From the IMG/VR virus record IMGVR_UViG_3300010938_000951, positions 186,001 through 250,000 of that record: a DNA stretch of 64,000 bases. One strand, written 5' to 3'. A model generated the notes under the pieces. It had not been told where the DNA came from. It worked only from the letters and a program-made list of their open reading frames with translations, and did not search any database. Made by a program: the position numbers and the translations under genes. How positions within the stretch are numbered: position 1 is the stretch's first letter; each line of letters starts with the position of its first letter. This document shows positions 1,030 through 39,319 of this stretch, piece by piece.

Positions 1030-1032
1030 GGT

Positions 1033-6757: not shown

Positions 6758-7154
6758 GTTTTGGCAAGCGCTGGCGAACTTGTTCTTCGAGAAATAAGAA
6801 ATCATCAGCCAATTCTTCAAATAATTTCCATTCACGGTTAATAAGCTTGTAGCAAGAATAATAAGAAAGTCTAGCTACAGTATCATAATATTCTTTGCTT
6901 GCAAATTGAAGATGTTGCGGCGCAATTGTATTGGCAAAAAATATCCAATCTCCTAAATTTTGGTAGACCAAAAAATCTTGTTTGTCACGGGCTTGCGCAA
7001 ACAACAAAGTGACACTATCTTTGGATAAGTCGAACTCGGCGGTCTTAAATTTTCCATAAATGCTAACAATGTATGCTTTTGTATCACGTTGGCACTGGAG
7101 ATCGTTTAGTAGTTCTTCAAAGAAACTACTAATGTTTCTGTGAAATACATCCAT
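6708..7154 (-). CDS. conserved hypothetical protein of bacterial type
   Basis: LGDWIFF...EYYDTVARLSY...LFEELADDF resembles an uncharacterised bacterial family (from recall). ATG 7154 is preferred over TTG 7166 because motif B lies 6 nt upstream. Confidence 0.7.
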   Translation of the reverse strand: MDVFHRNISSFFEELLNDLQCQRDTKAYIVSIYGKFKTAEFDLSKDSVTLLFAQARDKQDFLVYQNLGDWIFFANTIAPQHLQFASKEYYDTVARLSYYSCYKLINREWKLFEELADDFLFLEEQVRQRLPKLNMKTSEGIYIDPFGS

Positions 7155-16710: not shown

Positions 16711-17219
16711 TTGGTAAAGCCAATACGGTACCTATTATTAAGTTATTCCGTCATTATGGCGTGCGTTTAGATGCGTATAATAAGAAAACGACTTGCCCAT
16801 TTAAATCTCATGCAGGAGGGCGTGAGCGTTCACCTTCTTTTTGGTACTATCCGGATACCAATACATTCCATTGTTTTGGTTGTCACAAGGGGCCTTCTTG
16901 TTGTGATTTTGTAGCTGAAATGGAACAGTGTACAAAAGTACAAGCAGCACAGAAAATACTACAACTGTATGAATCAGATGTAGATGAGGATAATGTGTAT
17001 AACGCTCAAGATTTTGAGGCGCGCCTCAAAATAATGATGGATTTTTCTGACACCGTGCGTGATTTTTATCAGACTTATTCGACCGAAGAATCCAGGGTAT
17101 ATGTTGAGCAAGCGTGCAAAAAATTCGACACGCTGAACCATAAAAAGAAGCTTAATAATGAAGCGCTGAGTCGCATTGTTGAGCAACTTAAAGAATACAT
17201 AAACCTATATAAACCATGA
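16602..17219 (+). CDS. CHC2 zinc-finger protein (DnaG zinc-binding-domain-like)
   Basis: CPFKSH...ERSPSF...FHCFGC...DFV; true start uncertain. Confidence 0.85.
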   Translation: MRTISNTSRSNSDSKTPGETGSVAAAFAGKDYYQELIGKANTVPIIKLFRHYGVRLDAYNKKTTCPFKSHAGGRERSPSFWYYPDTNTFHCFGCHKGPSCCDFVAEMEQCTKVQAAQKILQLYESDVDEDNVYNAQDFEARLKIMMDFSDTVRDFYQTYSTEESRVYVEQACKKFDTLNHKKKLNNEALSRIVEQLKEYINLYKP

Positions 17220-25074: not shown

Positions 25075-25352
25075 TGAAGGTCGAAAGGTTCCTAATTCAA
25101 GCATGCTGTAATAAAAAGCAGATTGTCTTTAAATTAGACAAAACTGTTGATCAAAGTTTGCTTGAAGTTCTGAAAAGTAATGGGTTCACAGAAGCTGCCC
25201 ACTTTACTAAAGCAGGAATGCTATATGCCGATAATCTGGACTTAATAGTGACGGGTCCATTTGGTGGCGATAAGCTCAATGCTAAGTGTAAAAAAGCAGA
25301 TTGTGACCAAATCCTCAATGATTTTGAGGCTTTACTTGTCAGAACGGGGTGA
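25074..25352 (+). CDS. hypothetical protein
   Basis: TAATG coupling. Confidence 0.65.
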   Translation: MKVERFLIQACCNKKQIVFKLDKTVDQSLLEVLKSNGFTEAAHFTKAGMLYADNLDLIVTGPFGGDKLNAKCKKADCDQILNDFEALLVRTG

Positions 25353-26020
25353 TAATGGCAAAGGGTAAAGGTTCTATCGCTGAAATCAGAAAGAAAGTTA
25401 CCAAAACCCACGAATTCATTTCGACTTCTTATCATGAGGCTGGACACACGGTTTTTGCGTTGTTGCACCTTATGAAAGTCAGCTCTGTGTCTGTTTTTGA
25501 AAATAAACATTTTAAAAGAGTTCATGGAATTTGTTATTATGATTATCCTAGTGATTTTGATGAAATTCAAGATCCTGATTTGTTAAATACTTTACTTAAA
25601 GCCGAAATTGGTGTTAGTTATGCTGGTTTAATTGCAGAAACTTCTTTGTTTAGAAGTATTTCTGGTTCTAAGCAGACGCCAACTTTTATCAGTTACGGTT
25701 CGGCCGATGATAATAAATCAGCCCGAGAGGTGATTAAAAAATATAATCTAGCACCTCCTGGGCCTAAAAGAACAGCTTATAAAAGAAAAATTATGAATGA
25801 AGTTCAATCTGAGCTTCATTCTCACTGGGACGCGGTAATGGTTATAGCTCATGCGCTATTTCGCCATCGCCGTTTGTCCTTTGTTGATCTTCAAGACTTG
25901 CTTACTAAAAAAACACATAATAAAAAGTTTTGGAAAGATCAATTCAAAAAGATTAGTTATTTTTACGATAATAGCCAAAACCTTGACGAAAAAGATTTAA
26001 AATCTATATTGTCAAGGTAA
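25349..26020 (+). CDS. stand-alone peptidase M41 (FtsH protease domain)-like metalloprotease
   Basis: SYHEAGH, YAGLIAE, GSADD and the terminal helices IAHAL...L...DL.DLL. Confidence 0.8.
   Translation: MIMAKGKGSIAEIRKKVTKTHEFISTSYHEAGHTVFALLHLMKVSSVSVFENKHFKRVHGICYYDYPSDFDEIQDPDLLNTLLKAEIGVSYAGLIAETSLFRSISGSKQTPTFISYGSADDNKSAREVIKKYNLAPPGPKRTAYKRKIMNEVQSELHSHWDAVMVIAHALFRHRRLSFVDLQDLLTKKTHNKKFWKDQFKKISYFYDNSQNLDEKDLKSILSR
25980..26018 (+). promoter_or_regulatory. 39-bp interrupted palindrome overlapping sigma70-like promoter TTGACG-16-TATATT
   Basis: ACCTTGAC-N5-AGATTT-A-AAATCT-N5-GTCAAGGT, about 125 nt upstream of dnaE. Confidence 0.55.
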
Positions 26021-26142
26021 TGTAAGACCCACACCGTATTCCCTGGCACAGTACACGCAGTCTATCCTTAGATTGAAAATTCCCCTGAGATTGGGTAAGA
26101 TGTACACACGTGTTACAATACACAACCATATCAGGAGGTCAT

Positions 26143-29100
26143 ATGACCGACTTTGTTTCTCTGCATAATCAGACGCAGTTTTCTATTCTTGATTCAATTA
26201 TTACACCAAAGGCCCTTTTCAAACGAGCAAAAGAGTTAGGACAAACAGCGATTGCAGTTACTGATCATGGCTCTTTAGCTGGAGCCTGGGATGCCTGGAA
26301 AGCTTCAAAAGAAACTGGTGTCAAACTTATTATTGGATGCGAGTGTTATTTTCAAGATGATGCATCTAATGTTAATGAAAAGTTCCGCCATATTGTATTG
26401 TTGGCGAAGAATGCCGTTGGATATCGTAATCTTTTGACGTTAAATAAGAAAGGTTTCGATCAGAGTTCTTTTGTAGGTAAGCGCGTTTATTCTGTACTTG
26501 ATTGGAAGTTGCTGGAGCAGCATGCTGAGGGTTTAATTTGTTTAACAGCATGTGGTAATGGTATCATCAGCCAACCTATTATGAAGGGTAAAATGGATGA
26601 AGCAGAGAAAACTCTATTGCGACTTAAAGATTTGTTCGGTGATAATTTAGGTATTGAAATTCAGCCTAACAATATGAAGCGCGGTTCAAATATTTTTAAT
26701 GATGAAATCGATCAAGATTTTTTGAACAGACAATTAGTGAAGCTTGGCAAGAAACACAATGTTCGTGTTGTGGCTGCCTGTAATGCTCATTATCTAACTA
26801 AAGAAGATGCGGATGTACATGATGCATTCCTTGCTATTGGTGCGCATCAACCAAAGCATTCTGGTTTTCGTTTAAAGTATCCTGTACCAGAATTTTATCT
26901 CAAAACTGGCGATGAAGTTAAAGAGTTTTTTGCCAGAGTGTATCGCGATGACGCACAAACATTCGTTGACAATTCTGTATATTTTGCTAATCTGTGTGAA
27001 AAGCCTGAGTGGATTGATCCAAAGTTTTCCAATCCATCTGGCAAAGAGCTTCCTGTATTTCCTGTTAAAGATGAACCAGATTATCTGGAATTCCGTGACT
27101 GGGTTATTCAGCAATCAGAAAGCATTCAAAAATTAGAGGAAGACAAGCTTTTCTTACGTTATCGTTGTATTAAACGTTTTGATTCTCGTGTAAAGAACCT
27201 TACTCCAGAGCAGCGTGAACAATATAATAAACGCATAGAAGAAGAGTTAGATGTTTTAGAGTACCACGGATTCTCCAGCTATATGCTCATTGTAGCAGAT
27301 TTTATAGAATGGGCTAGAAAAAATGAAATTGCTGTTGGTGAAGGCCGCGGCTCTGTTGGTGGTTCACTAGTAGCGTATTTGCTAGGAATCCATCAAGCAG
27401 ATCCGATTAAATATAATTTGATTTTTGCTAGATTCCACAACAAAGAGAAGTCCAGCTTCCCTGATATTGATACCGACTTTGCACCGTCTGGTCGTGAAAA
27501 AGTACAAAACTATCTACGCCAGAAATATGGTGAAGATCATGTGGCGCACGTTAGTAACGTAAATACTATTACACCAAAAGTGTATGTTAAAGACATTGCT
27601 CGTATTTTTGAATTTGGCGGCTCTAAAGAGGAGGCGTTTAAGATTGGTAATGAAATCGCTAATTGTATTCCGGCGGAAATTCATTCTATTGAGGATGCAT
27701 TGGCAAAAGTTCCGCTATTTGCGGAATACGCCAAGAAATATCCAGAGTTCGAAAGATACAAGGATATCTGTGGAAAGTACCGTGCTTGGTCCACTCACGC
27801 CGGTGGTATTATCATCTCCGCTCGTCCCCTGACTGGACTTGTTCCACTCAGAAAGGATAAGGATGGAGCACTAGCTATTGAGTATGATAAGGATAAGGCC
27901 GAAGAAAATGGTCTAGTCAAAATGGATACCTTGGGCCTTTCAACTTTAGATATTATTGGCCAAGCTATGAAGCTGATCAAAGAGTCTGGAAAGACTCTTC
28001 CGGAAGATATTAATTATGACGAGTACGATCAAAGTGCTTACGATGTAATTTCAAATGGCGACACTTTCTGTGTCTTTCAGCTTGGAACATCTGGTGGAAC
28101 TATTGATTTGTGCAAACAAATCAAGCCAAGGTCTATCAATGATATTAGTTATATTAACTCACTTGCTCGCCCATCTGCTCGCGATATGAGAAAAGATTTT
28201 ATCTTAACCAAAGATGGCAAGAAACCATTCGCACTACTACATCCTACTTTGGGTCGAGCATTTAATAATACATTTGGATTTGGTCTCTACGAAGAGTCTC
28301 TAATGTATTTAGCTCAAGATGTAGCTGGTTGGAGTTTGCACTCTGCTGACCGTTTGCGAAAACTTACGAAGGAAAAAGGTAAGAATCCCAAGAAAGCTCA
28401 AGAATGGCGCGCGGAATTTATTAAAGATGCCATTGCCAACAATGTTAATGAAAATATTGCTAAACGCATTTGGGATGAGGTCGTAGATAAATTCCAGGGT
28501 TATGGTTTTAATATGTCTCACTCTATCTTGTATTCTATGACAAGTTACAAGACAGCATACTTAAAAGCACACTACCCAATTGAATTTTTAATGGCCAACT
28601 TAATGGCTGAAGTTAAGTCTAATGCACCAGATGCAAAAGGCAATATTGAGAAAATCAAAAAGGAAATTCGTAAACGTAGAGTTAAAATTGTTCCGCCTGA
28701 TATCAATAAATCACAACTCGCTTATACTATCGAAGATGGTAACAAACTAATTACTGGGCTAGATGCTATTAAATTTGTTGGTATTGATGCCATTAAGGAT
28801 ATTATTGAGAAACGACCATTTACTAGCTTCTTTGATTTTATGTCTAGAGTTAGTTCGAAAACAGTACGTGCGAATAGTATTCAGGCTTTGGCGGCATGTG
28901 GCGCGCTTGATTCCTTCGGAATTTCTCGTAAGCTAATGTATCTGTATTGTTCAGATTACCGCAAGAAACTACAAGTGTGGCTTAAAAAGCACGATCCAAC
29001 TAAAGAAGAGTTTATTTATCCTTGGCCAGCAGAACCCAATTGGTCTATGCCGGAAATATATGCTTTAGAGCATTATTACCTTGGTGAATCATTTACTTGT

Positions 29101-29655
29101 AAACCTGCGTTAGCGTATGGTAAATTTTTTGATGGTGATGCTGTGACTGTTCAAGAAATTAAACGCATGAAAGATAAGGCCAATGTATCATCAGTGAAAG
29201 GTATTATTCGCGATTTCTTTGAATTCCGTGTTAAAAAAGAGGGCAAGTATTATGGTCAAGCCATGATCAAGGCTGTCATTGAAGACAAGAATGGCGATCA
29301 ATGTACTTTAACTATTTTCCCGGATCGTTGGAAAATCGTACAAGAACGAATTCAAGAACTTAACAAAAAAGCCGAATTCGATATAGGTATAGCATTGTTC
29401 TTCTCTGGTAACACGAATTCTTATGAAGACGACATGGGAATCATATTGGATCAATTATACCACATTGCATTACCGCCCTCTCTTCCGGCCGATCTAAAAG
29501 CTAAGAAAATAAACCTTAAAGAGGCAAAAGCTAAGCTTTTCGGAGAAGTACCCGAGGAAAAACCTAAGAGTCCTCAAGAGATACTTGATCAAATAGAGGA
29601 TACTTTATATGATGAGGGTCTTATCGACTTGGATGACGAATCTGAGGATGACTGA
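26143..29655 (+). CDS. dnaE: DNA polymerase III alpha subunit (family C)
   Basis: PHP domain (TDHG, HIVLLAKN), GRGS.GGSLVAY, PDIDTDF, STHAGG, KMD.LGL and YGFN.SH; AGGAGG SD before ATG 26143. Confidence 0.97.
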   Translation: MTDFVSLHNQTQFSILDSIITPKALFKRAKELGQTAIAVTDHGSLAGAWDAWKASKETGVKLIIGCECYFQDDASNVNEKFRHIVLLAKNAVGYRNLLTLNKKGFDQSSFVGKRVYSVLDWKLLEQHAEGLICLTACGNGIISQPIMKGKMDEAEKTLLRLKDLFGDNLGIEIQPNNMKRGSNIFNDEIDQDFLNRQLVKLGKKHNVRVVAACNAHYLTKEDADVHDAFLAIGAHQPKHSGFRLKYPVPEFYLKTGDEVKEFFARVYRDDAQTFVDNSVYFANLCEKPEWIDPKFSNPSGKELPVFPVKDEPDYLEFRDWVIQQSESIQKLEEDKLFLRYRCIKRFDSRVKNLTPEQREQYNKRIEEELDVLEYHGFSSYMLIVADFIEWARKNEIAVGEGRGSVGGSLVAYLLGIHQADPIKYNLIFARFHNKEKSSFPDIDTDFAPSGREKVQNYLRQKYGEDHVAHVSNVNTITPKVYVKDIARIFEFGGSKEEAFKIGNEIANCIPAEIHSIEDALAKVPLFAEYAKKYPEFERYKDICGKYRAWSTHAGGIIISARPLTGLVPLRKDKDGALAIEYDKDKAEENGLVKMDTLGLSTLDIIGQAMKLIKESGKTLPEDINYDEYDQSAYDVISNGDTFCVFQLGTSGGTIDLCKQIKPRSINDISYINSLARPSARDMRKDFILTKDGKKPFALLHPTLGRAFNNTFGFGLYEESLMYLAQDVAGWSLHSADRLRKLTKEKGKNPKKAQEWRAEFIKDAIANNVNENIAKRIWDEVVDKFQGYGFNMSHSILYSMTSYKTAYLKAHYPIEFLMANLMAEVKSNAPDAKGNIEKIKKEIRKRRVKIVPPDINKSQLAYTIEDGNKLITGLDAIKFVGIDAIKDIIEKRPFTSFFDFMSRVSSKTVRANSIQALAACGALDSFGISRKLMYLYCSDYRKKLQVWLKKHDPTKEEFIYPWPAEPNWSMPEIYALEHYYLGESFTCKPALAYGKFFDGDAVTVQEIKRMKDKANVSSVKGIIRDFFEFRVKKEGKYYGQAMIKAVIEDKNGDQCTLTIFPDRWKIVQERIQELNKKAEFDIGIALFFSGNTNSYEDDMGIILDQLYHIALPPSLPADLKAKKINLKEAKAKLFGEVPEEKPKSPQEILDQIEDTLYDEGLIDLDDESEDD

Positions 29656-29757: not shown

Positions 29758-30702
29758 ATGCCAAAGATAAAGCTAAAGGAATGGGCCGATAGACACAATC
29801 TGTCTTACATTACCGCAAATAGACATTTCCACGCAGGATTAATTCCTGGGGCTAGTCAGCTTGACTCTGGCACAATTCTTGTAGAGGATGACTCACCGGA
29901 GCAAACTATGGCTGGAACTGCTAGCACAAATGATGCAATGTCTCTCTTTTTAAAGAAAACGGTTGAATTTAGTAAGAATAATTCTTCTGTAGAGGATTTT
30001 GCAGCTTATGTTATCTCGAATTTTAGACTACAATTGAATAATACCACTGAACATTCTCCTAGATATTCAAAAAATAGACCGAAATCAGAAGATGTACAAA
30101 AGCATTTCCAGCAATTTTTGCCAGATAAAGAGTCTCAAGAAAGATTAAAGGAAGTTAAAAACCTTATCAAGGAGGGCAAGCCTGCTGGTGAAGTTATCCC
30201 AGCCGGCCTGTCTCAACAGGCATCTGAACTATCTCAAGTATTAGGAAACGCTCCTCCATTTGAAAGAATTCATCCTGATCCAGATGGTTTAGGAGATGAA
30301 TTTAGACTTATGCTTTCTGAAGCAGCCGCAGGGATGGCTTCAGATGGAAGAACGCCTACTGAAGGTTTGGTATCACGAAGTGTTGATTTTAACACAACTC
30401 CACAACAAATCAACTATACCGGCTCTACAAGCCAAACCTTCAGTAGCACCTCTTCTATAATTGGTGGCATGTCTGTTAATGCTAGTCATTTAGCTGGGGG
30501 CGCCCCATTTGGAGAGGTTAGCACGAATGGAATATTTTTAGCAGCAACGCCAGCATCAGTTTCTGTTCCAGTTACTTTCCAGCCAACTCAAAAAGAATTA
30601 CTATCAGCCACTCAAGTTATAGAAACTGCCGAAGCTGATGATCTTAGTGAAACCAACGAATTCCCACGTAAGCGTGGCAGAAAACCATCCAAGAAGAGAT
30701 AA
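29758..30702 (+). CDS. DNA-binding protein: IS607-TnpA-like/MerR-type HTH, low-complexity middle, AT-hook-like tail
   Basis: IKLKEWADRHNLSYITANRHFHAGLIPGASQLDSGTILV; ends RKRGRKPSKKR; SD AAGGA before ATG 29758. Confidence 0.75.
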   Translation: MPKIKLKEWADRHNLSYITANRHFHAGLIPGASQLDSGTILVEDDSPEQTMAGTASTNDAMSLFLKKTVEFSKNNSSVEDFAAYVISNFRLQLNNTTEHSPRYSKNRPKSEDVQKHFQQFLPDKESQERLKEVKNLIKEGKPAGEVIPAGLSQQASELSQVLGNAPPFERIHPDPDGLGDEFRLMLSEAAAGMASDGRTPTEGLVSRSVDFNTTPQQINYTGSTSQTFSSTSSIIGGMSVNASHLAGGAPFGEVSTNGIFLAATPASVSVPVTFQPTQKELLSATQVIETAEADDLSETNEFPRKRGRKPSKKR

Positions 30703-30704
30703 GA

Positions 30705-31724
30705 ATGCAATTACCTAATCGTTTATCTCAGTTGTTACAGAAACAAACTGATAGATTATTAAAAGACCTATTGTCTGAGAATCCTGATGTTCTTAAGAGT
30801 TATGTTAATGGTGGTCTTGCTGCCGTCGGTGCAGTATTAGCGCCAATTAATGTGTTTATGAGGCATTTATTAACAGTTCAGGGACTAGATCCTGATGCTG
30901 TGCCAGGAGAGAAACAAAGGGCATTGATACGGGCAGCTTTCAATAGTACATTTGAAAATAATCACGAAAAAGATTATGATGATGATTATGATGTTTCTTG
31001 GGTTCATAAAAAGTATAATTCTATAAAAGACAAATTCAATGTCACAGAAGATAAGTTTATGGCCCTAACTGATTTGTCAAAATTAGATAATGCCCCTCCA
31101 GTTTTGACAAAAGTAAAATTTGATGAGCTGGTTCAAGATATTAATCCAGTAGCTCCCGAGTCTGAGAAGCGCGAATTGCCTTTAGTTAAAACATATATGC
31201 AAGATGAAATTCAGGCGCTTAAAGAATTTGTGGAGACTATGGATAAACACAGCCAAAAGGCTGGAATTAAAACATCTACTAAAAAAGCCAATAAGGGTAA
31301 GAGGCCAGGCGCTAGAGTTCGTAGGGTAACCAGCTCTACAACCATCAAAGATGAACCAACAACATTAGAAGTGAAGTCTGATCGTGTTGTGCGACCATCA
31401 TCTAAGAAATTGCCAGCTCGTAATTTGAAAGATTTAACCGCACAAAAGAAAGAGAAAGTTAAAGCTATTAAAGAAGCAACCCCTGAATTTCAAGCAGAAT
31501 TAAAAGCAAAATTAGCAAAAGCAACAGAACTAACTAGTCTTATGATAGAAAAGGGACTTTGCAGAGCAGATGATCAATCTCGTAAAGATCAAATTGAATC
31601 AATGTTGTCTTGGACAGATAATAATTTTGATGCACTAGAAAGAGTAATTAACAAATATTCTCCTACTAAAGATGCAGTGGCTGAGAATAAATTCAAGGGC
31701 TCTTTTAGAAGAGTTCAGAAATAA
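30705..31724 (+). CDS. hypothetical protein with a C-terminal domain paralogous to the scaffold C-terminus
   Basis: 20/52 gapless identity with aa 1134-1185 of the 59151 protein. Confidence 0.8.
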   Translation: MQLPNRLSQLLQKQTDRLLKDLLSENPDVLKSYVNGGLAAVGAVLAPINVFMRHLLTVQGLDPDAVPGEKQRALIRAAFNSTFENNHEKDYDDDYDVSWVHKKYNSIKDKFNVTEDKFMALTDLSKLDNAPPVLTKVKFDELVQDINPVAPESEKRELPLVKTYMQDEIQALKEFVETMDKHSQKAGIKTSTKKANKGKRPGARVRRVTSSTTIKDEPTTLEVKSDRVVRPSSKKLPARNLKDLTAQKKEKVKAIKEATPEFQAELKAKLAKATELTSLMIEKGLCRADDQSRKDQIESMLSWTDNNFDALERVINKYSPTKDAVAENKFKGSFRRVQK

Positions 31725-31731
31725 GGTACAA

Positions 31732-32187
31732 ATGCCAATTAGACGTGTTCAACAACAATCAGACAGAGGAAGTATTCGTGATTTGCAAAATGGAGATGAC
31801 GAAAAGTATCCTCCAACTGACTACGAATTACGCGTAAAAGAATTGTATGAACACGCTTTGGTTACTAAAAATCAAGCCTTAGTTGACTCCCTGGGCTTGA
31901 TTCCAATTAATGGTTCTGCTAATGATCCAGTTTCTATTTTTAGACACCGTGAATATATAAAGTCTCTTAGTTCAGAACTGGCGGATAAAATACAACAGAC
32001 AGCTAAAGAGATTGAAGGTTGTTTACATGTGGATGAAACGTCTTTGCCACAAGAAGTTAAGTGGTCTAGATATAAACAGGCTCATTCTTTGGCGGCTATT
32101 TGTGAGGATATTGATATAGTTAAAGTGGCAAGTGCTGATGGTGGTACTTATACTAGAGCGAAAAGAAGTTTTAGAAGGGTAATCTAA
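31732..32187 (+). CDS. hypothetical protein
   Basis: AAGGT SD before ATG 31732; ends KRSFRRVI. Confidence 0.7.
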   Translation: MPIRRVQQQSDRGSIRDLQNGDDEKYPPTDYELRVKELYEHALVTKNQALVDSLGLIPINGSANDPVSIFRHREYIKSLSSELADKIQQTAKEIEGCLHVDETSLPQEVKWSRYKQAHSLAAICEDIDIVKVASADGGTYTRAKRSFRRVI

Positions 32188-33020
32188 TGAAGTGTGTATC
32201 CTGCGAAACAGAAATTAATCCAAAATGGAAGCATGCGATAGACATAAATGTGTGTCCATTCTGTGGTAAACATATCATGGAAGAGCATCTTAAAAATTGT
32301 CTAACTACTTTGGCTGCTGCCATGGATGCTATGTTAAAATATCCTGAGCAGTTAGATGATTGGCTATTGTCAAATCATAATTATATCAAAACGGATTCTC
32401 CTAATCTGAAACAGTTTCTTCCCAAAGAGGCTTTTAAAGAAATTCGTAAAGAGCTTGATGAGCAAGAGTTTCAGGAAAAGAAAAAATCTATCGTCAAAAT
32501 TAAAGTACCTACTGACGACGGTGATATTGTGGAACAAGAAGTGGTTGTCGAGAAGATGGTTACTGATGACAGGACTCAAACATTCCATGATCGCGCAAAC
32601 AATATGTTGAAGCAAGAGAAAGCCGTGGATGGTGACCCTAAAAGTGTCGCCGCAAAAACTAGGGATCTTAAAGCGATGGCAGAAAAAATCAAGCGAGAAG
32701 TTGCCGCGCAAGCGGAAGGTGGTATGGCACCTATGATCAGCAAAGAGATGATGGCCGAAGCAGATCCAGAAGCTGTACGAGAATTTCAGTCCATGATTGC
32801 TTCTGGTGATATAGTGTCTTCAAGTTTGCCTGCTGCCGCTGATGGTGATGATGACGATATTCCAGATGTTGTATTGGCTATGGCTAATATGAAAAAATCT
32901 GGATCTAAAGATGGTGGGGCTAACGAAAAAGATTTACATGCATTAGCAAAAATGCAAGCTAAAGCGCAGGGAGCTTCTAAACGATTGGGTTCTGGTAAAG
33001 GAAGTTTTTCAAGGGGATAA
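32187..33020 (+). CDS. hypothetical protein with N-terminal zinc ribbon
   Basis: CVSC and CPFC; ends KGSFSRG. Confidence 0.75.
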   Translation: MKCVSCETEINPKWKHAIDINVCPFCGKHIMEEHLKNCLTTLAAAMDAMLKYPEQLDDWLLSNHNYIKTDSPNLKQFLPKEAFKEIRKELDEQEFQEKKKSIVKIKVPTDDGDIVEQEVVVEKMVTDDRTQTFHDRANNMLKQEKAVDGDPKSVAAKTRDLKAMAEKIKREVAAQAEGGMAPMISKEMMAEADPEAVREFQSMIASGDIVSSSLPAAADGDDDDIPDVVLAMANMKKSGSKDGGANEKDLHALAKMQAKAQGASKRLGSGKGSFSRG

Positions 33021-33023
33021 ACC

Positions 33024-33329
33024 ATGGCAGTCAGAGTCGTTGACAATAAGAAACTGGAAATGACAGATGATGAATGGGATATGTACCAAAAAATCTGCAA
33101 ATCATATACAGATATGACGGGTAAGGGCGAAGACCTTTTCATGGATCTTTTTGAGACTAACGATGATGGAATTATTGTTTTTCTAAAGCCGCCCTCTAAA
33201 AGAAGAACGAGCTTAGAAGTATTTTTATTTTTGATGTCATTAATGCAACACCAACATTTACGATTAATGCACCAACAAATTGATGAAGCAGTGGCCGAAA
33301 TAAAGAAAAACAATAAGGCCACTAAATAA
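33024..33329 (+). CDS. hypothetical protein
   Basis: AGGGG SD; tiles with neighbours. Confidence 0.7.
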   Translation: MAVRVVDNKKLEMTDDEWDMYQKICKSYTDMTGKGEDLFMDLFETNDDGIIVFLKPPSKRRTSLEVFLFLMSLMQHQHLRLMHQQIDEAVAEIKKNNKATK

Positions 33330-33383: not shown

Positions 33384-33893
33384 ATGAGCCAACCAGTAAG
33401 ACTAGGCGATGTTTTAGGTTCTAACCTTGAGGAAGATTTCAAGAATTTCGACCTCACGGAAATTCAAAAAGTATTAGAACAGCTAAGGGATGCAGATGCT
33501 ATTGATTTGGCACATGCAGAGCTTTTACAACAACAAGCATTAAGGGGAGCAGATATCTTAGCAGATTATCTAGCTAAGATGGTAAAGACAGTAGCGTATC
33601 TAGAATCGAAAGTGAATAGTACGAAGAATAAAGTGTCCTTAGATTATGTTGCGCCAGATGGCTCAAGAACGACAGTGGACATGAAGAAATGGGCAGGAGA
33701 ATCATCGCCCGAAGTCGAAGCAGTACAAATAAAATTAGCAGAAGCCAAGGGCGGTAAGATGGCCCTGGACCGAAAATACGAGATTTTAATCAAAGCTCAC
33801 CACCATTTTAAAGATATTGCGGGCGGGCTTCGAAAGACGATCCTCGGTTATAGTTCAGGGGCTGGCAACGCACCTGGCGAAGGCTACGAATAA
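33384..33893 (+). CDS. coiled-coil protein, possibly a UvsY-like recombination mediator
   Basis: All-helical heptad pattern and position directly upstream of recA; the function is inferred. Confidence 0.55.
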   Translation: MSQPVRLGDVLGSNLEEDFKNFDLTEIQKVLEQLRDADAIDLAHAELLQQQALRGADILADYLAKMVKTVAYLESKVNSTKNKVSLDYVAPDGSRTTVDMKKWAGESSPEVEAVQIKLAEAKGGKMALDRKYEILIKAHHHFKDIAGGLRKTILGYSSGAGNAPGEGYE

Positions 33894-33904: not shown

Positions 33905-35104
33905 ATGTCAGATGATAAGAAAAAGAAAGCCGATAAGCTAACCGCATTTTTCCGAAGTTTCGCAGATGCAGACGCTCAGCTAGACGTTAGACTTGCCCAT
34001 GAAACCGTGGGAGAAAAGTTGCCAGTCATTTCGACGGGCTCATTAGCTCTTGATGATGCACTTTCATCCGGTGGATTGCCAAAAGGTAGATTAATTCAAT
34101 ATTATGGCGCTCCTGGTAGCGGTAAAACTTTGATGACCATGTTGGCAATCAAAGAAGCACAACTTCAAGATCCAACATCTCAACAAATGTTTATTGATGC
34201 TGAAGGTACTTTTGATGCCAAATGGGCAGAGACTTTAGGGTTAGATTCATCTAGAATTATTGTTGTTGACGGTGAAACGGCTGTTATTGGTCGTAACTGT
34301 TTTGAGATGATTCTTGGCGTTCCAAAAGAAGACAAAAAGACTCATGAGCTAGTCGGCAAATCGAAACAAGGCTTGCTCGATATGATTATGGCAGGAGAGT
34401 TTAATATCAATATGGTTGTATTAGACTCACTTGGTGCCATTATTCCACCAGGCGAAGATGTTTCGGTTGTTGGAAAGATGAATATGGCCTTATTGGCAAG
34501 GTTCTTAACTACTACTTTCCGTAAGCTTTCTCTTGATGCAAATAGAGCGCAAGTGCCATTTATTTTCATCAATCACAAGAAAGCTAATATGGATCCTTAT
34601 GGTGTGGACCATTCGTTCTCTGGCGGAAATACTTATGCTCACTTCTTGAGCGCTAACGTTTACTTTGAAGCGGTAGCACGTGCAGATGCACAAATCTTGG
34701 ATGAAAAAGAGCAAAAGGTCGGACATACGATGCGTGCAACCATTGAAAAATCGAAGTTTGGCCCTTACCCACGTAAGTGCGAATTCAAAGTTAACTTCGG
34801 AATCGGCGTTATAGATAAGCACGAAGAAATCGCACAATTAGCTGTTGATTACAATGTAATTGTAAAGACCTCTACTGTAACCCATGAATATGGCGATCAG
34901 AAATGGGTCGGATTCAACAAAGTGTGTGAAGCTATTAAAGACAATCCTGCATTAGCTGAGGAGTTGGTTGTTAAAATTGGCCAAGCTCGTGAAGCAAAGT
35001 GGGATGCAGCCCGCAAGGAACAAGAGGCAAAAAAAGCCAGTGTAACTGCCAGTGATGATGCTGGTCTTGAAGTAGAATCAAAAAAGAGTAAGAAAGGTAA
35101 GTAA
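33905..35104 (+). CDS. recA: RecA recombinase
   Basis: ISTGSLALD..L..GGLPKGR, YGAPGSGKT, FIDAE, VLDSL and KSKFG. Confidence 0.95.
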   Translation: MSDDKKKKADKLTAFFRSFADADAQLDVRLAHETVGEKLPVISTGSLALDDALSSGGLPKGRLIQYYGAPGSGKTLMTMLAIKEAQLQDPTSQQMFIDAEGTFDAKWAETLGLDSSRIIVVDGETAVIGRNCFEMILGVPKEDKKTHELVGKSKQGLLDMIMAGEFNINMVVLDSLGAIIPPGEDVSVVGKMNMALLARFLTTTFRKLSLDANRAQVPFIFINHKKANMDPYGVDHSFSGGNTYAHFLSANVYFEAVARADAQILDEKEQKVGHTMRATIEKSKFGPYPRKCEFKVNFGIGVIDKHEEIAQLAVDYNVIVKTSTVTHEYGDQKWVGFNKVCEAIKDNPALAEELVVKIGQAREAKWDAARKEQEAKKASVTASDDAGLEVESKKSKKGK

Positions 35105-35486: not shown

Positions 35487-35807
35487 ATGAAAAGGAATGT
35501 TCGTAAAGTTTATCTAGGTACTGTTTGGCCAGACCCAGCAGACATAGATGAGTTGGTCTTTACAAAGATCAATACGGTATTAAGTGGCCAATCTGGTAGC
35601 AACTGGACTGGAACAATGTCAAAACTGATGACTGCTATTAACAGAGTTTCTAGCAGGCGTCAGAGAGATCAATTGCCCGGTTCCCCTGGTGCTCTCAGAG
35701 TGGTAATCAATAGAATAGCCAATAGGCTACGTAACAGAGGTATTGGAGTAAGATTTGGCCGTACCACTGACCACGCCCGCACTCGTTACGTAAGATTTAC
35801 ACAATAA
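35487..35807 (+). CDS. basic hypothetical protein, possibly winged-helix DNA-binding
   Basis: Arg-rich helix-helix-beta-hairpin pattern (W.GTMS.L...RLR..GI.V.F.R). Confidence 0.55.
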   Translation: MKRNVRKVYLGTVWPDPADIDELVFTKINTVLSGQSGSNWTGTMSKLMTAINRVSSRRQRDQLPGSPGALRVVINRIANRLRNRGIGVRFGRTTDHARTRYVRFTQ

Positions 35808-35892
35808 TGTGATAGAGCTACGATCGATTGTTTTGTTAAGTAGATAAACGTACTAGAAAAGTACAAAGAAGAAATAACATTTGGAGATCAAA

Positions 35893-36612
35893 ATGAGTAC
35901 ATTCGGTGAAGTATCTTGGAATGATGATGTGTTCCCAGGCGATAACAAGAAGCAAACAAACAGCAAAGACCTCTTTCTTCGTTTAGATGAGGGTCCGAAC
36001 GAAATCCGTATTCTGACCCAGCCACACCAGTACTTGGTACACAAGTACAAGAAAGAAGGTGACAACGGTTTCGGACAGAAAGTTCAGTGCTCCGCAATCC
36101 ACGGAAGCTGCCCTCTCTGTGCGGATGGCGATAAGGCCAAGCCACGTTGGTTGTTAGGTGTCATTAGTCGTAAGACTAACACCTACAAGATTTTGGATAT
36201 CTCTTTCGCTGTGTTTTCACAGATTAGAAAGTATAACAAGAATCCAAGATTTGGTGATCCAACCAAATATGACATCAACATTGAAGTTGATAAGAACGGT
36301 GGTGCCACTGGATATTACAGTGTTCAAGCCTTACCAAAGGAACCACTATCAGCCGCTGACCAAGTAATTAAGGACAGCATTGATTTTGATGACCTGAAGC
36401 GCAGAGTCACTCCTCCTACCCCTGAAAAAGTTCAGGCTAGATTGGACAAGATCAATGGTGTAACGACCAACGGTGCACCAGCTCCTTCCGCATCGGCCCC
36501 AGCCGCTGCTAAGAAAAGCACCAAGGCTGCCGCTCCAGCCGTCAGCATGACTGATGATGAGGAACTAGATAAGTCCTTTCCTAACTATGAAGGTGACGAA
36601 GCTCAGTCCTAA
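35893..36612 (+). CDS. single-stranded DNA-binding protein, T4 gp32-like
   Basis: FLRL..G.N.IRIL, H..C..CPLC zinc site, GDP..YDI.I and an acidic C-tail; GGAG SD before ATG 35893. Confidence 0.8.
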   Translation: MSTFGEVSWNDDVFPGDNKKQTNSKDLFLRLDEGPNEIRILTQPHQYLVHKYKKEGDNGFGQKVQCSAIHGSCPLCADGDKAKPRWLLGVISRKTNTYKILDISFAVFSQIRKYNKNPRFGDPTKYDINIEVDKNGGATGYYSVQALPKEPLSAADQVIKDSIDFDDLKRRVTPPTPEKVQARLDKINGVTTNGAPAPSASAPAAAKKSTKAAAPAVSMTDDEELDKSFPNYEGDEAQS

Positions 36613-36635: not shown

Positions 36636-36675
36636 AAAGGCCCATAACCTATTTGGTTATGGGCCTTTCTGTTTT
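36636..36675 (+). terminator. intrinsic terminator after ssb
   Basis: AAAGGCCCATAACC-tattt-GGTTATGGGCCTTT (14-bp perfect stem) followed by a T-rich run. Confidence 0.85.
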
Positions 36676-36679
36676 ATTT

Positions 36680-36686
36680 GATATAT
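36680..36686 (+). promoter_or_regulatory. motif A TGATATAT(T)
   Basis: Immediately after the terminator and exactly 8 nt before ruvC ATG 36695; no usable SD. Confidence 0.55.
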
Positions 36687-36694
36687 TACCAGGT

Positions 36695-37267
36695 ATGGTT
36701 AAAACGGTCTTAGGATTCGACGCATCGAGTACGACTATTGGTTATTCTATATTAAGTTGGGACGAAACAACAAATAATATAGCCTTTGTCAAAGCCGGCT
36801 ACATTAAACCAAAGAAGACAGGATCTATTATTGAAAGAATAGTAGATACTAGAAATCAGGTTCAAAAAGTTATTGTTGATGCTAAACCTGATTATATTTC
36901 AATTGAAGAGATTATTCAATTTATGAAAGGCAAAAGCACAGCAAAAACTATTATTATGTTGACTACATTTAATAGGATGATTTGTTTAACGGCTTATGAT
37001 TATCTTGGTAAAGAACCTACTCTTTATAGTGTTATGACTATTCGTCATGGATTAAAGACCACCAAAGATTTACCAAAAAAAGAAGATATGCCGGCCCTTG
37101 TCGCCCAACATTTAGGAATTACGTTTCCCTACGAGTATAATAAGAAGGGCGGCATTAAAATCGAAAGCTATGACAAAGCTGACGGTGTTGCAGTGGCCCT
37201 TTATCACGCATTGGCCTTATCGGGCAAGGTGAAATCTAAAGGAAAGTCTAAAGGCAAGAAGAAATGA
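36695..37267 (+). CDS. ruvC: RuvC-like Holliday junction resolvase
   Basis: VLGFDASS..GY, ISIEE and DKADG.AVA. Confidence 0.85.
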   Translation: MVKTVLGFDASSTTIGYSILSWDETTNNIAFVKAGYIKPKKTGSIIERIVDTRNQVQKVIVDAKPDYISIEEIIQFMKGKSTAKTIIMLTTFNRMICLTAYDYLGKEPTLYSVMTIRHGLKTTKDLPKKEDMPALVAQHLGITFPYEYNKKGGIKIESYDKADGVAVALYHALALSGKVKSKGKSKGKKK

Positions 37268-38193
37268 ATTTAAAGGAAGCCTACGCAATTTTAGAATTGT
37301 CTCCCGGTGCCACGCCAGAGGAAGTCAAGAAGAAGTACCGAGAACTTACTAAAAAATATCACCCTGACATAAATAAAGAGCCGGGAGCAGAAGAGAAGTT
37401 CAAGAAAATTAATGAAGCTCATGAAGTTGTCAAGACTGGTAAAAGTACTGATTTACAGGATCGTATGCCAAGACAGGGAGGGTTTCATCGTCAACAGCAA
37501 TTCATTCAATTAGAAAATGTTGAAATGTTTACAACTATTTCTTTCAAGGAATCTGTTTTAGGTTGTAAGAAAGAGATTAAATATGATCGTCAAACCAAAT
37601 GCCAAAATTGTAATGGTCAAGGTGAAATAAGACTCCATAATGGCTGCAAAAAATGTGGTGGGCGAGGGCAGATTACTACTCGGCAAGGAAATATGATAGT
37701 TATGACCACTTGTGATGAGTGTTATGGTCGTTCTAATGTATCAACCTGTGATGTATGTAGTGGTAATGGTACCGTCCAGGCGCACGCATCTGTGCACGTG
37801 TCTATACCTGCGGGTATTGTAAATGGCAATACATTGCGATTGCAGGGTATGGGAAATTTTGCCGGCTCTTTTATGGGTCTAGCTGATCAATATACAGATG
37901 CATTTTTGCATGTAGCAGTTACTCCAGAGCCTGGATTATCTTTAGATGGGCAAAATGTAATAAGTACGCTTACTATTTCGTTATTAGATGCATTGCGTGG
38001 CTGTAAACGTATGGTGAAAACCATTCATGGTGAAAAAGAAATTCAAATTAAACCGCAATCCAGAAATCATGATGAGGTAATTATTCCTCATCATGGGGTA
38101 AATAATATGGGTAATCAAAAGGTTATTTTGGATGTAGAATACCCTAAGAATACTGATAAATTGATTAGTGTTCTATTAGATGAGGTAGTATAA
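37264..38193 (+). CDS. dnaJ: DnaJ (type I-like: J domain, four Cys repeats, C-terminal domain; G/F region short)
   Basis: YHPD, CQNCNGQG, CKKCGGRG, CDEC and CDVCSGNG. Confidence 0.93.
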   Translation: MNLKEAYAILELSPGATPEEVKKKYRELTKKYHPDINKEPGAEEKFKKINEAHEVVKTGKSTDLQDRMPRQGGFHRQQQFIQLENVEMFTTISFKESVLGCKKEIKYDRQTKCQNCNGQGEIRLHNGCKKCGGRGQITTRQGNMIVMTTCDECYGRSNVSTCDVCSGNGTVQAHASVHVSIPAGIVNGNTLRLQGMGNFAGSFMGLADQYTDAFLHVAVTPEPGLSLDGQNVISTLTISLLDALRGCKRMVKTIHGEKEIQIKPQSRNHDEVIIPHHGVNNMGNQKVILDVEYPKNTDKLISVLLDEVV

Positions 38194-38555
38194 TGCCACT
38201 TGCATTACATTGTACGAATACGCACATAGATAAATTTGGAAAAAAGAAAACTTGCGGTCAAGTTGAGCCATATATGGATCCAAAGACTGAACAGGTATTT
38301 TGTCCGTTATGCGATAATGAAATGCCGAATGTGACGCATTTTACAAAAGTTACCTTAAAAAATCTTAAACAATTTCGTACTAAACCACAAATTCCATTTG
38401 GCGTTAAGTGCCAAAATTGCGGGAAAGAAGCACAACCACAAATTGTAGGCGACGATATAGTGTGTCCTGGGTGTGCAAAACCTCATTCTCATTTAAGCGA
38501 GCCTTTCAAGCTTATGTTGAAAGATAAGCTACGAACCGTAAATAAAGACGTATAA
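38193..38555 (+). CDS. multi-zinc-ribbon protein
   Basis: CPLC, CQNC and CPGC plus N-terminal Cys residues; coupled to the primase core. Confidence 0.75.
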   Translation: MPLALHCTNTHIDKFGKKKTCGQVEPYMDPKTEQVFCPLCDNEMPNVTHFTKVTLKNLKQFRTKPQIPFGVKCQNCGKEAQPQIVGDDIVCPGCAKPHSHLSEPFKLMLKDKLRTVNKDV

Positions 38556-39319
38556 TGCTGGAAAAGATAGTTGAATCTTGCCGATTTTTGCTAAATAGCT
38601 ATCCGGACGCGCGGCCTAGCAAGTCCTATCTTGATTCGCGCCTTAGTGATAAAAGCCAAGAGCTTTTTCAGTTTGGCTATTTTCCTGGCGTACAAAATAT
38701 GTCGGTGTTAACAGATTTAGTAGGTGAAGAGGCCCTTGCCAAAGAAAAGCTTCTATTTTCTAAGGAAATAGAAGATTCGTTATTTCCACGTAAAGTGCAG
38801 TATTGTTATTTTGAGGATTATCCCTTGGTAATGCCTTTTAAAGATCCTTATGGTAAGGTTGTTGGCCTAGTAGGTAGGACACTTTTGCCCGATAAGGAAC
38901 AAAAGGAAAAGGGAATTTCTAAATACAAAAATACTAAATTTGAAAAGGGTAATTTTCTTTTTGGTCTTTATGAAAACAAACAGTCTATTTTAGACCGGGG
39001 ATTTGTTTATATTGTAGAGGGTCAAATAGATGTAATTAAGGCTTCAGAAGTAGGATTAAGAAATATTGTAGCTTTAGGAAATTCTAATATGACTTCCTAT
39101 CAATTTTCAGTCATTAGCAGATACTCTAATAACATATTTTTGCTATTAGATAATGACGAAGCGGGTCAAAAAGGGAGGAAACGGATCGTTAATAAGTTTG
39201 GGCAATTTGCCAATATTCGTAATTTTTACTTACCTGACGACTACAAAGATATAGATGAATACATCACTAAACGAGGAATTAGTGATCAGGGAGAGCTATC
39301 TTTTGGTGTCAAAGATTGA
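38555..39319 (+). CDS. dnaG: DNA primase catalytic core (no zinc-binding domain, no helicase-binding domain)
   Basis: P..D..G.VVG..GR, KYKNT, LFGL, VEG..DV and toprim LDNDEAG. Confidence 0.92.
   Translation: MLEKIVESCRFLLNSYPDARPSKSYLDSRLSDKSQELFQFGYFPGVQNMSVLTDLVGEEALAKEKLLFSKEIEDSLFPRKVQYCYFEDYPLVMPFKDPYGKVVGLVGRTLLPDKEQKEKGISKYKNTKFEKGNFLFGLYENKQSILDRGFVYIVEGQIDVIKASEVGLRNIVALGNSNMTSYQFSVISRYSNNIFLLLDNDEAGQKGRKRIVNKFGQFANIRNFYLPDDYKDIDEYITKRGISDQGELSFGVKD

What the first reader, a model, noticed from the sequence alone, without database searches (positions are those of the whole stretch)
31697..33020. Three consecutive genes end in the same short motif K-[GR]-S-F-[RS]-R
Seen: C-termini FKGSFRRVQK* (30705 gene), AKRSFRRVI* (31732 gene) and GKGSFSRG* (32187 gene). 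The Ser uses TCT in one and AGT in two, pointing to protein-level selection. Related [FIV]RRV words occur at the start of the 31732 protein (MPIRRVQ) and inside the 30705 protein (VRRVT). Inference: a shared docking tag or degron linking otherwise unrelated proteins to one partner such as a Clp adaptor, kinase or assembly hub. Caveat: SD constraints for the next gene could explain the final R/G in two cases, but not S-F.
Basis: partly seen in the sequence, partly recalled or inferred. Interest (0 to 1): 0.6.

Follow-up and report, generated by a model that had tools for sequence, protein, structure and literature searches.

The report
Conserved C-terminal tag in huge phage
Several unrelated proteins of an uncultivated, roughly 450-kb bacteriophage end in the same few amino acids (small-small-Phe-x-Arg), and hundreds of relatives keep this tail, so it is most likely a plug that ties them to one shared partner, which I could not identify.

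Summary
Genes A (30705-31724), B (31732-32187) and C (32187-33020) end in KGSFRRVQK, KRSFRRVI and GKGSFSRG.

- **Conservation:** 118 of 120 database relatives of C end G-[SG]-F-S-R plus 1-3 residues. 116 of 120 relatives of B end S-F-x-R-[VIA] plus 1-2 residues.
- **Variable slot:** the fast-evolving genes upstream of C keep the tail even when the rest of the protein is unrecognisable.
- **Selection level:** synonymous codons vary freely, so selection acts on the protein, not on the next gene's ribosome-binding site.
- **Structure:** the tails are conservation peaks at the end of disordered linkers.
- **Other carriers:** an unlinked family (F) and a 68-aa protein in a relative also carry the tail.
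- **Context:** the replication-recombination module of a huge phage (Pol III alpha, RecA-like, SSB, Mre11/Rad50, RuvC, primase). The phage also encodes two ClpP, a Cdc48/YjoB-like AAA, a stand-alone FtsH-type protease domain, trigger factor and DnaJ.

Best reading: a short linear docking motif for one common partner. The partner is unresolved. A resemblance to the RecA N-terminal oligomerisation strand (GKGSIMRL) is suggestive but weak, and one complex prediction gave no verdict. A degron and a nucleic-acid-binding tail remain open. A kinase site is unlikely.

The parts
30705..31724 (+). Gene A, 339 aa orphan protein. It has a conserved N-terminal ~100 aa and a Lys-rich, poorly conserved middle, and ends ..NKFKGSFRRVQK.
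   Evidence: Orthologues end F[KT]G[SNT]FRR...
31695..31721 (+). Tag of A: K-G-S-F-R-R-V-Q-K, then the stop codon.
   Evidence: It is a conservation peak after a low-conservation stretch.
31732..32187 (+). Gene B, 151 aa orphan helical protein. Both termini are disordered in the model. It starts MPIRRV and ends KRSFRRVI.
31732..31749 (+). N-terminal M-P-I-R-R-V of B, a second hydrophobic-R-x-V word. It is followed by the invariant S-D-R-G-S-I.
   Evidence: 97/120 relatives start M-P-[IFY]-[RK]-x-[VIA]. S10, D11 and G13 are invariant.
32161..32184 (+). Tag of B: K-R-S-F-R-R-V-I, then the stop codon.
   Evidence: 116/120 relatives end SF.R[VIA] plus 1-2 aa. pLDDT is below 50 for residues 145-151.
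32187..33020 (+). Gene C, 277 aa. It has an N-terminal C4 zinc ribbon plus helical domain (residues 1-80, pLDDT ~80) and a long low-confidence region, then a helix at 246-268 followed by the tail GKGSFSRG. It is present in every related genome examined.
32994..33017 (+). Tag of C: G-K-G-S-F-S-R-G, then the stop codon. G270, F274, S275 and R276 are invariant.
   Evidence: Synonymous codon variation is shown.
29758..30702 (+). Gene X (probable ATG at 29758). It is the conserved left border of the variable slot and carries a different conserved tail, the AT-hook-like PRKRGRKPSKKR.
33024..33329 (+). Gene D, 101 aa. It is highly conserved, acidic in its N-terminal half, and its start lies 3 nt after the stop of C. 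It is a candidate partner but was not tested.
33384..33893 (+). Gene E, 169 aa, highly conserved, immediately upstream of the recombinase. I take it as a possible UvsY-like mediator from its position and from memory of T4 UvsY only.
   Evidence: No family hit.
33905..35104 (+). RecA-like recombinase, 399 aa. It was the candidate partner tested once.
   Evidence: Pfam RecA 1.5e-32 and PDB RecA about 1e-30. Complex prediction with the C tail gave ipSAE 0.02, no verdict.
26110..29655 (+). DNA polymerase III alpha-like protein, 1181 aa. It gives the context of the module and carries its own conserved acidic tail ..LYDEGLIDLD..
25349..26020 (+). Stand-alone FtsH-type (M41) zinc-peptidase domain, 223 aa. 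It bears on the degron rival.
   Evidence: Invariant HEAGH, YAGL.AE and GS.DD. The profile hits E. coli FtsH residues 399-501 at E = 2e-5.

Best explanation
The tails are a short linear docking motif. The core is [G/K/R]-[S/G/N/T]-Phe-x-Arg followed by only 1-3 (rarely up to 5) residues, at the end of a disordered C-terminal linker. Through this motif, several otherwise unrelated proteins of this huge-phage clade attach to one common partner.

The carriers are the universal zinc-ribbon protein C, the fast-evolving 'slot' proteins A and B next to it, and the unlinked family F.

Inferred mechanism: the peptide folds on binding, probably as an added beta-strand or an extended peptide in a groove. 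The invariant Phe goes into a hydrophobic pocket. The invariant Arg, two residues on and therefore on the same face, forms a salt bridge. The small residues before Phe allow close backbone approach.

Given where A, B and C sit, the partner is most likely a component of the phage or host replication-recombination machinery.

Shown: existence, conservation, protein-level selection, disorder, and spread over unrelated proteins. Inferred: that it binds a protein, and which one.
For: - **Conservation island at the extreme C-terminus.** It follows poorly conserved or low-confidence sequence in A, B and C.
- **Breadth of conservation.** Near-invariance over 40-100% identity in 120 cluster representatives each of C and B.
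- **Protein-level selection.** Synonymous codon turnover occurs at every motif position.
- **Independent carriers.** A, B, C and F share no detectable similarity outside the tag.
- **Retention in the variable slot.** The slot between X and C holds 0-3 genes of 95-389 aa. In about 20 of 30 loci (my reading of the tails listed) at least one of them keeps a hydrophobic-x-Arg tail, even where HMMs no longer recognise the body.
- **Family F.** It keeps G[SV]FRR and ends [FY]-x-R-[FVI].
- **Position.** The distance from Arg to the end is fixed: 1-2 residues in C, 2-3 in B.
- **Context.** The genes lie inside a Pol III alpha / RecA / SSB / RuvC / primase module with conserved synteny in 33 loci.
- **Precedent (established knowledge).** Clamp-binding tails, SSB tips, and RecA-NT/BRC motifs (PMC6511836, PMC11791011) work in this way.
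Against: - No partner was identified.
- The only complex prediction allowed (phage RecA core plus C residues 238-277) scored 0.02, which the tool rates as no evidence either way.
- A lineage seen in three samples (L004-L006) has lost C's stop codon and carries 10 extra residues after the Arg. A free end right after the motif is therefore not absolutely required.
- C-termini of this phage are mildly enriched for aromatic-x-Arg in general, about 2-3 fold, so part of the signal could be compositional.
- A conserved C-terminal micro-motif in the neighbouring gene X is an AT-hook. This shows that a DNA-binding tail can be just as conserved.
Confidence: 0.5

Rival explanations
1. Specific form of the docking idea: the tails imitate the N-terminal oligomerisation strand of RecA (E. 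coli ..F-G-K-G-S-I-M-R-L..). They would occupy the site on a RecA-family recombinase where the neighbouring protomer normally binds, as the RecA-NT motif of UmuC/ImuB and the BRC FxxA motif do. The target would be host RecA or the phage RecA-like protein.
For: - The E. coli RecA N-terminus was read from the genome, and 78 RecAs keep FGKG[SAT][IV]M[RK][LM]G.
- G(-2), small(-1), hydrophobic(0) and Arg(+2) of the tag coincide with RecA G-S-I-x-R.
- hhalign of the C-tail profile against a RecA-NT profile aligns GKGSFSR with GKGSIMR, with P = 0.0098.
- Against a RecA-strand PSSM, the tails lie in the top 0.01% (C), 0.06% (A), 0.2% (F) and 0.4% (B) of 362,086 8-mers from three phage proteomes.
- C has a helix directly before the strand, as RecA-NT does.
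- The genes sit just upstream of the phage recA-like gene.
- Precedent: PMC6511836 and PMC11791011.
Against: - hhalign probability is only 4%, and the A and B profiles do not align.
- In the window's own genome the C tail ranks only 8th of 80,263 8-mer windows; across three phage proteomes 36 of 362,086 windows score as high.
- I compared the tag with many remembered motifs, so the P values need correction.
- There is no Pfam DUF4113 or RecA hit on the tails.
- The phage RecA's own N-terminal strand (..QLD[FYV][RK][LM]AHE) does not look like the tag.
- Complex prediction with phage RecA gave no verdict.
- The tag is unchanged in loci where the recombinase is replaced by a divergent 334-aa RecA.
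- A beta-strand mimic would not need to sit 1-3 residues from the C-terminus.
Confidence: 0.13
2. The tail is a degradation or unfoldase-recognition tag. It would be read from the free C-terminus by an AAA+ machine, either the phage's Cdc48/YjoB-like AAA working with the stand-alone FtsH-type peptidase or the two ClpP, or host ClpXP/FtsH. This would keep these proteins short-lived.
For: - Position is strictly C-terminal, with few residues after Arg.
- The tail is disordered.
- The clade universally encodes two ClpP and the AAA protein.
- The M41 peptidase domain lies in the same gene block, just before Pol III alpha.
- Aromatic-plus-basic peptides are the preferred signature of several chaperones and AAA+ proteins, and MuA's basic C-terminal ClpX signal is a precedent (both from my own knowledge).
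Against: - Known C-terminal degrons depend on the last residues, and most of them are non-polar. Here the last 1-2 residues vary while Phe(-4/-5) and Arg(-2/-3) are invariant.
- The L004-L006 lineage tolerates a 10-residue extension.
- B also carries a related word at its N-terminus.
- There is no evidence that the AAA pairs with either peptidase. No ClpP-docking loop was evident by eye in its sequence.
Confidence: 0.17
3. The tail is a small nucleic-acid-binding element: an aromatic residue stacking on a base plus Arg on phosphate, RGG-like in C (..RGKGGFSRSG). It would tether these proteins to phage DNA, ssDNA or RNA rather than to a protein.
For: - The Gly-rich, Arg- and Phe-containing context in C relatives resembles RGG boxes.
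- The neighbouring proteins have basic DNA-binding-type tails: the X AT-hook, and the Lys-rich tails of RecA and RuvC.
- C has a zinc ribbon, and the module handles DNA.
Against: - Single-residue invariance (F, R) and a fixed distance to the end over hundreds of sequences are tighter than expected for a non-specific basic tail.
- The position between Phe and Arg varies between families (Arg in A and B, Ser in C, Asp/Glu/Ser at the end of F).
Confidence: 0.13
4. Coincidence or a DNA-level constraint: the shared residues arise from ribosome-binding sites or coupling signals for the next gene, or from composition.
For: In B-to-C and C-to-D, the Arg/Gly codons AGAAGGG and AAGGGGA lie 7-12 nt before the next ATG.
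Against: - Arg is also CGA/CGC/CGG, Ser switches between TCN and AGT, and the spacing to the next start varies from overlap to more than 20 nt.
- The A tail is about 20 nt upstream of a separate TAAGGT site.
- Family F carries the tag elsewhere in the genome.
Confidence: 0.02
5. Basophilic Ser/Thr-kinase phosphorylation site. K-G-S-F-R-R resembles PKC-type optimal peptides (from memory), and a small kinase-like gene lies at G000:23997-24623.
For: The sequence resemblance in A, and a kinase-like gene seen.
Against: The Ser before Phe is G in about half of C relatives, and N, T, V or A elsewhere. The Ser after Phe is Arg in A, B and F. No phospho-acceptor is shared.
Confidence: 0.02

Closest known systems
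Sliding-clamp-binding tails (bacterial QL[SD]LF; T4/RB69 gp45-binding tails on polymerase, gp33 and gp55)
   Same: A 5-8 residue motif, usually at the extreme C-terminus of a flexible tail. It is shared by unrelated replication and repair proteins, with an aromatic anchor going into a pocket of one hub.
   Different: The tag lacks the defining Gln and the Leu before Phe, and it adds an invariant Arg. No clamp gene was found in five related genomes. One other protein of the clade (G000:118470-118991) does end ..QPSLFPRK, which fits both patterns.
RecA-NT motif (Pfam DUF4113) of UmuC/ImuB and the BRC FxxA motif of BRCA2
   Same: Unrelated proteins dock on a recombinase by copying its own oligomerisation strand. 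The G-S-hydrophobic-x-R register of the tag matches RecA G-S-I-M-R, and the genes neighbour a recA-like gene.
   Different: The similarity is statistically weak. There is no Pfam hit. RecA-NT is defined mostly by the helix and the Gly that ends it. Binding is untested (one search gave no verdict).
SSB C-terminal tip (..DDDIPF) and T7 gp2.5/gp4 acidic tails
   Same: A strictly C-terminal peptide with a terminal-region Phe, read together with the chain end, that organises many partners around one protein.
   Different: The charge is opposite (basic rather than acidic), and the topology is reversed: many proteins carry the tag and one partner reads it.
C-terminal degrons (ssrA ..LAA; MuA ..RRKKAI for ClpX; non-polar tails for FtsH)
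   Same: A disordered C-terminal tag on unrelated proteins, in a phage that encodes ClpP, AAA and FtsH-type peptidase genes.
   Different: The last residues are variable here, and the invariant residues lie 2-5 positions in from the end.
Encapsulin cargo-loading peptides (..GSL[KR][KRG]) and the phage scaffold/CpmB C-terminal capsid-binding tails
   Same: A C-terminal G-S-hydrophobic-basic tail on unrelated cargo proteins that binds the inside of an HK97-fold shell. The pairing of variable cargo with a constant tail resembles the variable slot genes.
   Different: Those peptides use two or three aliphatic anchors. The carriers here lie in a replication module. There is no evidence that they are virion proteins. 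This was not tested.

Membership tests
Short linear motif (SLiM) in the general sense | 3-10 residues with a few fixed positions, lying in intrinsically disordered sequence | tested here: met
   F and R are invariant and small residues precede them. pLDDT is below 50-60 and there is no regular structure at the tails.
Short linear motif (SLiM) in the general sense | A conservation island flanked by fast-evolving sequence | tested here: met
   Per-column conservation profiles.
Short linear motif (SLiM) in the general sense | Occurs in proteins that are otherwise unrelated | tested here: met
   A, B, C and F share nothing else. A C-tail HMM finds only C, and there are no shared families.
Short linear motif (SLiM) in the general sense | Binds a defined domain of a partner | not testable with these tools
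   One complex job was allowed and it gave no verdict.
Bacterial beta-clamp-binding motif | Gln at position 1 and Leu/Met-Phe at positions 4-5 (QL[SD]LF) | tested here: not met
   The A, B and C tails have no Gln at -4 and have Ser/Gly at -1.
RecA-NT-like motif (DUF4113) | Detectable profile similarity to the RecA N-terminal helix-Gly-strand | tested here: inconclusive
   hhalign for C gives P = 0.0098 at 4% probability, and A and B give nothing. There is no Pfam hit. PSSM percentiles are 0.01-0.4%.
RecA-NT-like motif (DUF4113) | Binds the oligomerisation surface of a RecA-family protein | tested here: inconclusive
   Complex prediction ipSAE was 0.02, rated by the tool as no evidence for or against. 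Host RecA was not tested.
ClpX/FtsH C-terminal degron | The last 2-3 residues (non-polar, or MuA-like basic plus aliphatic) are the conserved determinants | tested here: not met
   The terminal residues vary (G/S/A/T/V/I in C; I/S/K/R/E in B), whereas -4 and -2 are fixed.
Basophilic kinase substrate site | An invariant phospho-acceptor Ser/Thr at a fixed position | tested here: not met
   Position -1 is S/G/N/T/A/V and position +1 is R/S/W/K/T.
Encapsulin-type cargo-loading peptide | The carriers are packaged inside an HK97-fold shell | not tested
   No proteomic data exist, and the major capsid protein was not identified in the window.

The most novel reading that the evidence does not exclude
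Huge phages carry a family of BRC-like 'RecA caps'. Fast-evolving proteins, together with the universal zinc-ribbon protein C, would end in a copy of the bacterial RecA oligomerisation strand. With it they would dock on, or cap, host RecA, and so block or redirect host recombination and SOS signalling. The phage's own RecA-like enzyme has a divergent strand and would escape. This would be the first viral use of recombinase-interface mimicry as a portable tag.
Probability: 0.1. Interest if true: 0.8.

Novelty: new variant of a known kind. Interest (0 to 1): 0.5.

Why it matters
Huge phages are known almost only from metagenomes, and most of their genes are orphans. A portable, strictly conserved tail gives a handle on that dark matter. 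It groups at least four or five orphan families into one interaction network, and it marks which residues to mutate. It also offers a bait of about 8 residues for fishing out the hub, whether that is a replisome or recombination component, a protease, or a host factor. If the hub is a host protein such as RecA or the clamp, the tag would be a new route of host take-over and a possible peptide inhibitor lead. If the hub is the phage's own AAA/protease set, the tag would define a virus-encoded degron system.

Tried and rejected
**Family, homology and fold searches**
- Pfam and PHROG scans of A, B, C, D, E, F and their neighbours gave no family for A, B, D, E or F. C gave only a weak zinc-ribbon PHROG hit.
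- Profile searches against PDB sequences for C and B found nothing significant.
- The 25-aa tails searched against PDB gave nothing.
- Tail segments searched against Pfam at E up to 10 gave nothing relevant.
- AlphaFold2 models of C and B followed by Foldseek against PDB gave no match.
- ESM Atlas look-alikes of C and F were only hypothetical phage proteins.
- No cultured phage relative was found by DNA or protein search.

**Complex prediction**
- Complex prediction with phage RecA core 31-365 and C 238-277 scored 0.02, 'no support, no evidence against'. I report it only here. No further complex or fold jobs were available, so host RecA, D, E, SSB, the AAA protein and the clamp could not be tried.

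**RecA-strand similarity**
- PSSM and hhalign tests showed suggestive but not compelling similarity.

**Candidate readers of C-termini**
- No PDZ domain or tail-specific protease is conserved in the clade.
- No beta-clamp or gp45 clamp was found.

**Look-alike tails I rejected**
- G000:25000-25290 ends ..RDSLGRFSRV, but its G003 orthologue ends ..GRFKKA, so it is a different motif.
- The 106-aa protein at 35487-35807 ends ..RYVRFTQ, which looks like the last strand of a folded wing rather than a free tail (my judgement).
- The polynucleotide kinase-phosphatase ends ..DQAEFFK, which is part of the HAD fold.
- [KRQ]GS[hydrophobic] words are common, 20-30 per genome, and mean nothing on their own.

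**Literature**
- Literature searches found no description of this tag.

Full report
**What the window is.** The window lies in a 266,899-bp virus record, G+C 39%, estimated 62% complete. Relatives in IMG/VR are complete genomes of 433-481 kb. No cultured phage is similar. This is therefore an uncultivated huge phage.

Around the finding, on the + strand:
- a DksA-like protein and two ClpP (92-1632)
- an FtsK-like ATPase
- a YjoB/Cdc48-like AAA (9017-10327)
- Mre11/Rad50 (17216-20631)
- trigger factor (23490-24737)
- a stand-alone FtsH-type peptidase domain (25349-26020)
- Pol III alpha (26110-29655)
- gene X with an AT-hook tail (29758-30702)
- genes A, B and C, then D and E
- a RecA-like recombinase (33905-35104)
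- a gp32-like SSB (35881-36612)
- RuvC, DnaJ and primase, then terminase and portal

**The observation.** A, B and C end KGSFRRVQK, KRSFRRVI and GKGSFSRG. The pattern [KR].S[FYW].R occurs five times in all six-frame ORFs of the window, and three of these are the tails. In the whole record [SG]F[RS]R occurs six times, five of them within ten residues of a C-terminus.

**Conservation.** Searching with C found 33 syntenic loci at 30-85% identity.
- *C family.* In all loci C ends G-x-F-S-R plus 1-3 residues. Among 120 cluster representatives from 414 database homologues, 118 end G[SG]FSR and the other two end NGFSRSG.
- *B family.* 116 of 120 relatives end S-F-x-R-[VIA] plus 1-2 residues, and 97 begin M-P-[IFY]-[RK]-x-[VIA].
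- *A family.* A evolves fast, but most orthologues keep G[SNT]FRR.
- *The slot.* The region between X and C holds 0-3 genes of very different length. In about 20 of 30 loci, by my reading, at least one carries the tail, including bodies that HMMs no longer link to A or B (for example ..WNGSFRRVAHKE..KFKGSFKRV..FGGIFNRVTVK).

**Protein-level or DNA-level selection.** At the five motif codons of C, every position shows synonymous alternatives, including a TCN/AGT switch for Ser and AGR/CGN for Arg. The distance to the next start codon varies. Selection is on the protein. The Shine-Dalgarno explanation fails.

**Structural setting.** Conservation profiles show a peak at the tail after poorly conserved sequence.
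- The AlphaFold2 model of C has a confident N-terminal zinc-ribbon/helical domain (residues 1-80), a low-confidence middle, a helix at 246-268 and then an unstructured tail.
- B is a helical bundle with disordered ends.
- Neither model matches a solved fold.

**Other carriers.**
- Family F (G000:92370-93320), 125 kb away, has ..GSFRRVEQPQVFDRF. Its relatives keep G[SV]FRR and end [FY]-x-R-[FVI].
- A 68-aa protein of the complete relative G001 ends ..RGTFRRVT.
- In the distant complete genome G003, C still carries the G-x-F-x-R tag. A and B are absent there, and F ends only ..AYARF. C is therefore the ancestral, universal carrier.
- Aromatic-x-Arg within four residues of the end is enriched 2-3 fold over internal positions in three genomes.
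- Two further conserved tails fit the loose pattern..QPSLFPRK on a 173-aa protein with a long Pro/Thr/Ala linker, and ..LFERLS on a ligase-like protein. I do not count them as established members.

**What it is.** All general criteria of a short linear motif are met. The fixed residues Gly(-2), Phe(0) and Arg(+2) lie on one face of an extended strand. This pattern is what strand addition or groove binding predicts. That step is inference.

**Which partner.**
- *RecA mimicry.* The best sequence lead is the RecA N-terminal oligomerisation strand. The E. coli sequence ..FGKGSIMRLG.. was read from the genome, and 78 RecAs keep it. Bacterial Y-family polymerases are known to copy this element, called RecA-NT, to bind RecA (PMC6511836, PMC11791011). 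hhalign aligns GKGSFSR of C with GKGSIMR at P = 0.0098 but only 4% probability, and A and B do not align. On a RecA-strand PSSM the tags lie in the top 0.01-0.4% of 362,086 phage 8-mers, but the C tail ranks only 8th of 80,263 windows in its own genome. The phage RecA's own strand is different. The tag does not change where the recombinase is replaced by another type. The single complex prediction allowed gave no verdict. I rate this case at about 0.1-0.15.
- *Degron.* This is plausible because the clade always encodes two ClpP and the AAA protein, and because an FtsH-type peptidase domain lies in the same block. However, the variable last residues and a natural 10-residue extension (L004-L006) do not fit known end-read degrons.
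- *Nucleic-acid binding.* An RGG-like tail cannot be excluded. The AT-hook tail of X shows that such tails can be equally conserved.
- *Clamp motif.* The canonical form is not met for A, B and C. No clamp gene was found.
- *Kinase site.* This is excluded by the substitutions at both Ser positions.

**Verdict.**
- The finding is real, non-trivial and, as far as I could find, not described.
- The kind of feature is familiar: a hub-docking or recognition tail.
- The motif, its carriers and its partner are new and unresolved.
- I place it as a new variant of a known kind, interest 0.5.

Noticed in passing
window 25349-26020 (+): A 223-aa protein just upstream of Pol III alpha is a stand-alone FtsH-type (M41) zinc-peptidase domain with no AAA or membrane part. 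HEAGH, YAGL.AE and GS.DD are invariant. Its profile hits E. coli FtsH residues 399-501 at E = 2e-5. Pfam missed it at E <= 0.001.
   Followed up: partly
window 92-1632, 9017-10327, 23490-24737, 37264-38193 (+): The phage carries a large proteostasis set: a DksA-like zinc finger, two tandem ClpP, a YjoB/VAT/Cdc48-like AAA, a full trigger factor and a DnaJ, plus a GroES-like gene at G000:86676-86981. ClpP and the AAA are core genes in five related genomes.
   Followed up: partly
window 26110-29655, 29758-30702, 33905-35104, 35881-36612, 36653-37267: Other conserved C-terminal tails occur in the same module:
- Pol III alpha ends ..LYDEGLIDLD plus an acidic run.
- X ends ..PRKRGRKPSKKR (AT-hook).
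- RecA ends ..KKSKKGK.
- SSB ends ..[DE].SFP.YE...
- RuvC ends ..GKVK.KGKKK.
The module seems to be wired together by tails.
   Followed up: no
G000:C1:118470-118991 (outside the window); orthologues at G001:116656 and G003:175605: A 173-aa protein has a folded N-domain, a Pro/Thr/Ala-rich linker and an invariant end, LW.Q..Q.QPSLFPRK. QPSLF resembles the bacterial clamp-binding motif, and F-P-R-K also fits the aromatic-x-Arg rule.
   Followed up: partly
G000-G005 whole records: No beta-clamp or gp45-type clamp is detectable by Pfam in five genomes that all encode a Pol III alpha. The phage may depend on the host clamp or have an unrecognisable one.
   Followed up: partly
L004, L005, L006 (one lineage, three samples), positions 4518-6813: In this lineage gene A is split into two ORFs (240 and 127 aa). 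C has lost its stop, so its tail reads GSFSRVNHGNQSR and overlaps the start of D.
   Followed up: no
L012, L013, L014, L029, about 7200-8700: The E plus RecA-like pair is replaced by a 140-aa protein plus a divergent 334-aa RecA-family protein (Pfam RecA 1.6e-12). C and its tail stay unchanged.
   Followed up: partly
G000:C1:25000-25290 and G003:88023-88304: A small coiled-coil protein ends ..NYHNVRDSLGRF plus basic residues (SRV or KKA). This is a separate conserved C-terminal word (RD..GRF), next to a kinase-like gene at G000:23997-24623.
   Followed up: partly
window 59151-62846 (+): A 1231-aa protein has N-terminal residues 105-213 that match head-maturation-protease PHROGs. This is an unusually large protease-containing protein near the portal and terminase.
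   Followed up: no
window 38193-39319 (+): The primase appears split. A 120-aa zinc-ribbon protein is followed by a 254-aa DnaG catalytic core/Toprim protein that has neither the zinc-binding nor the helicase-binding domain.
   Followed up: no
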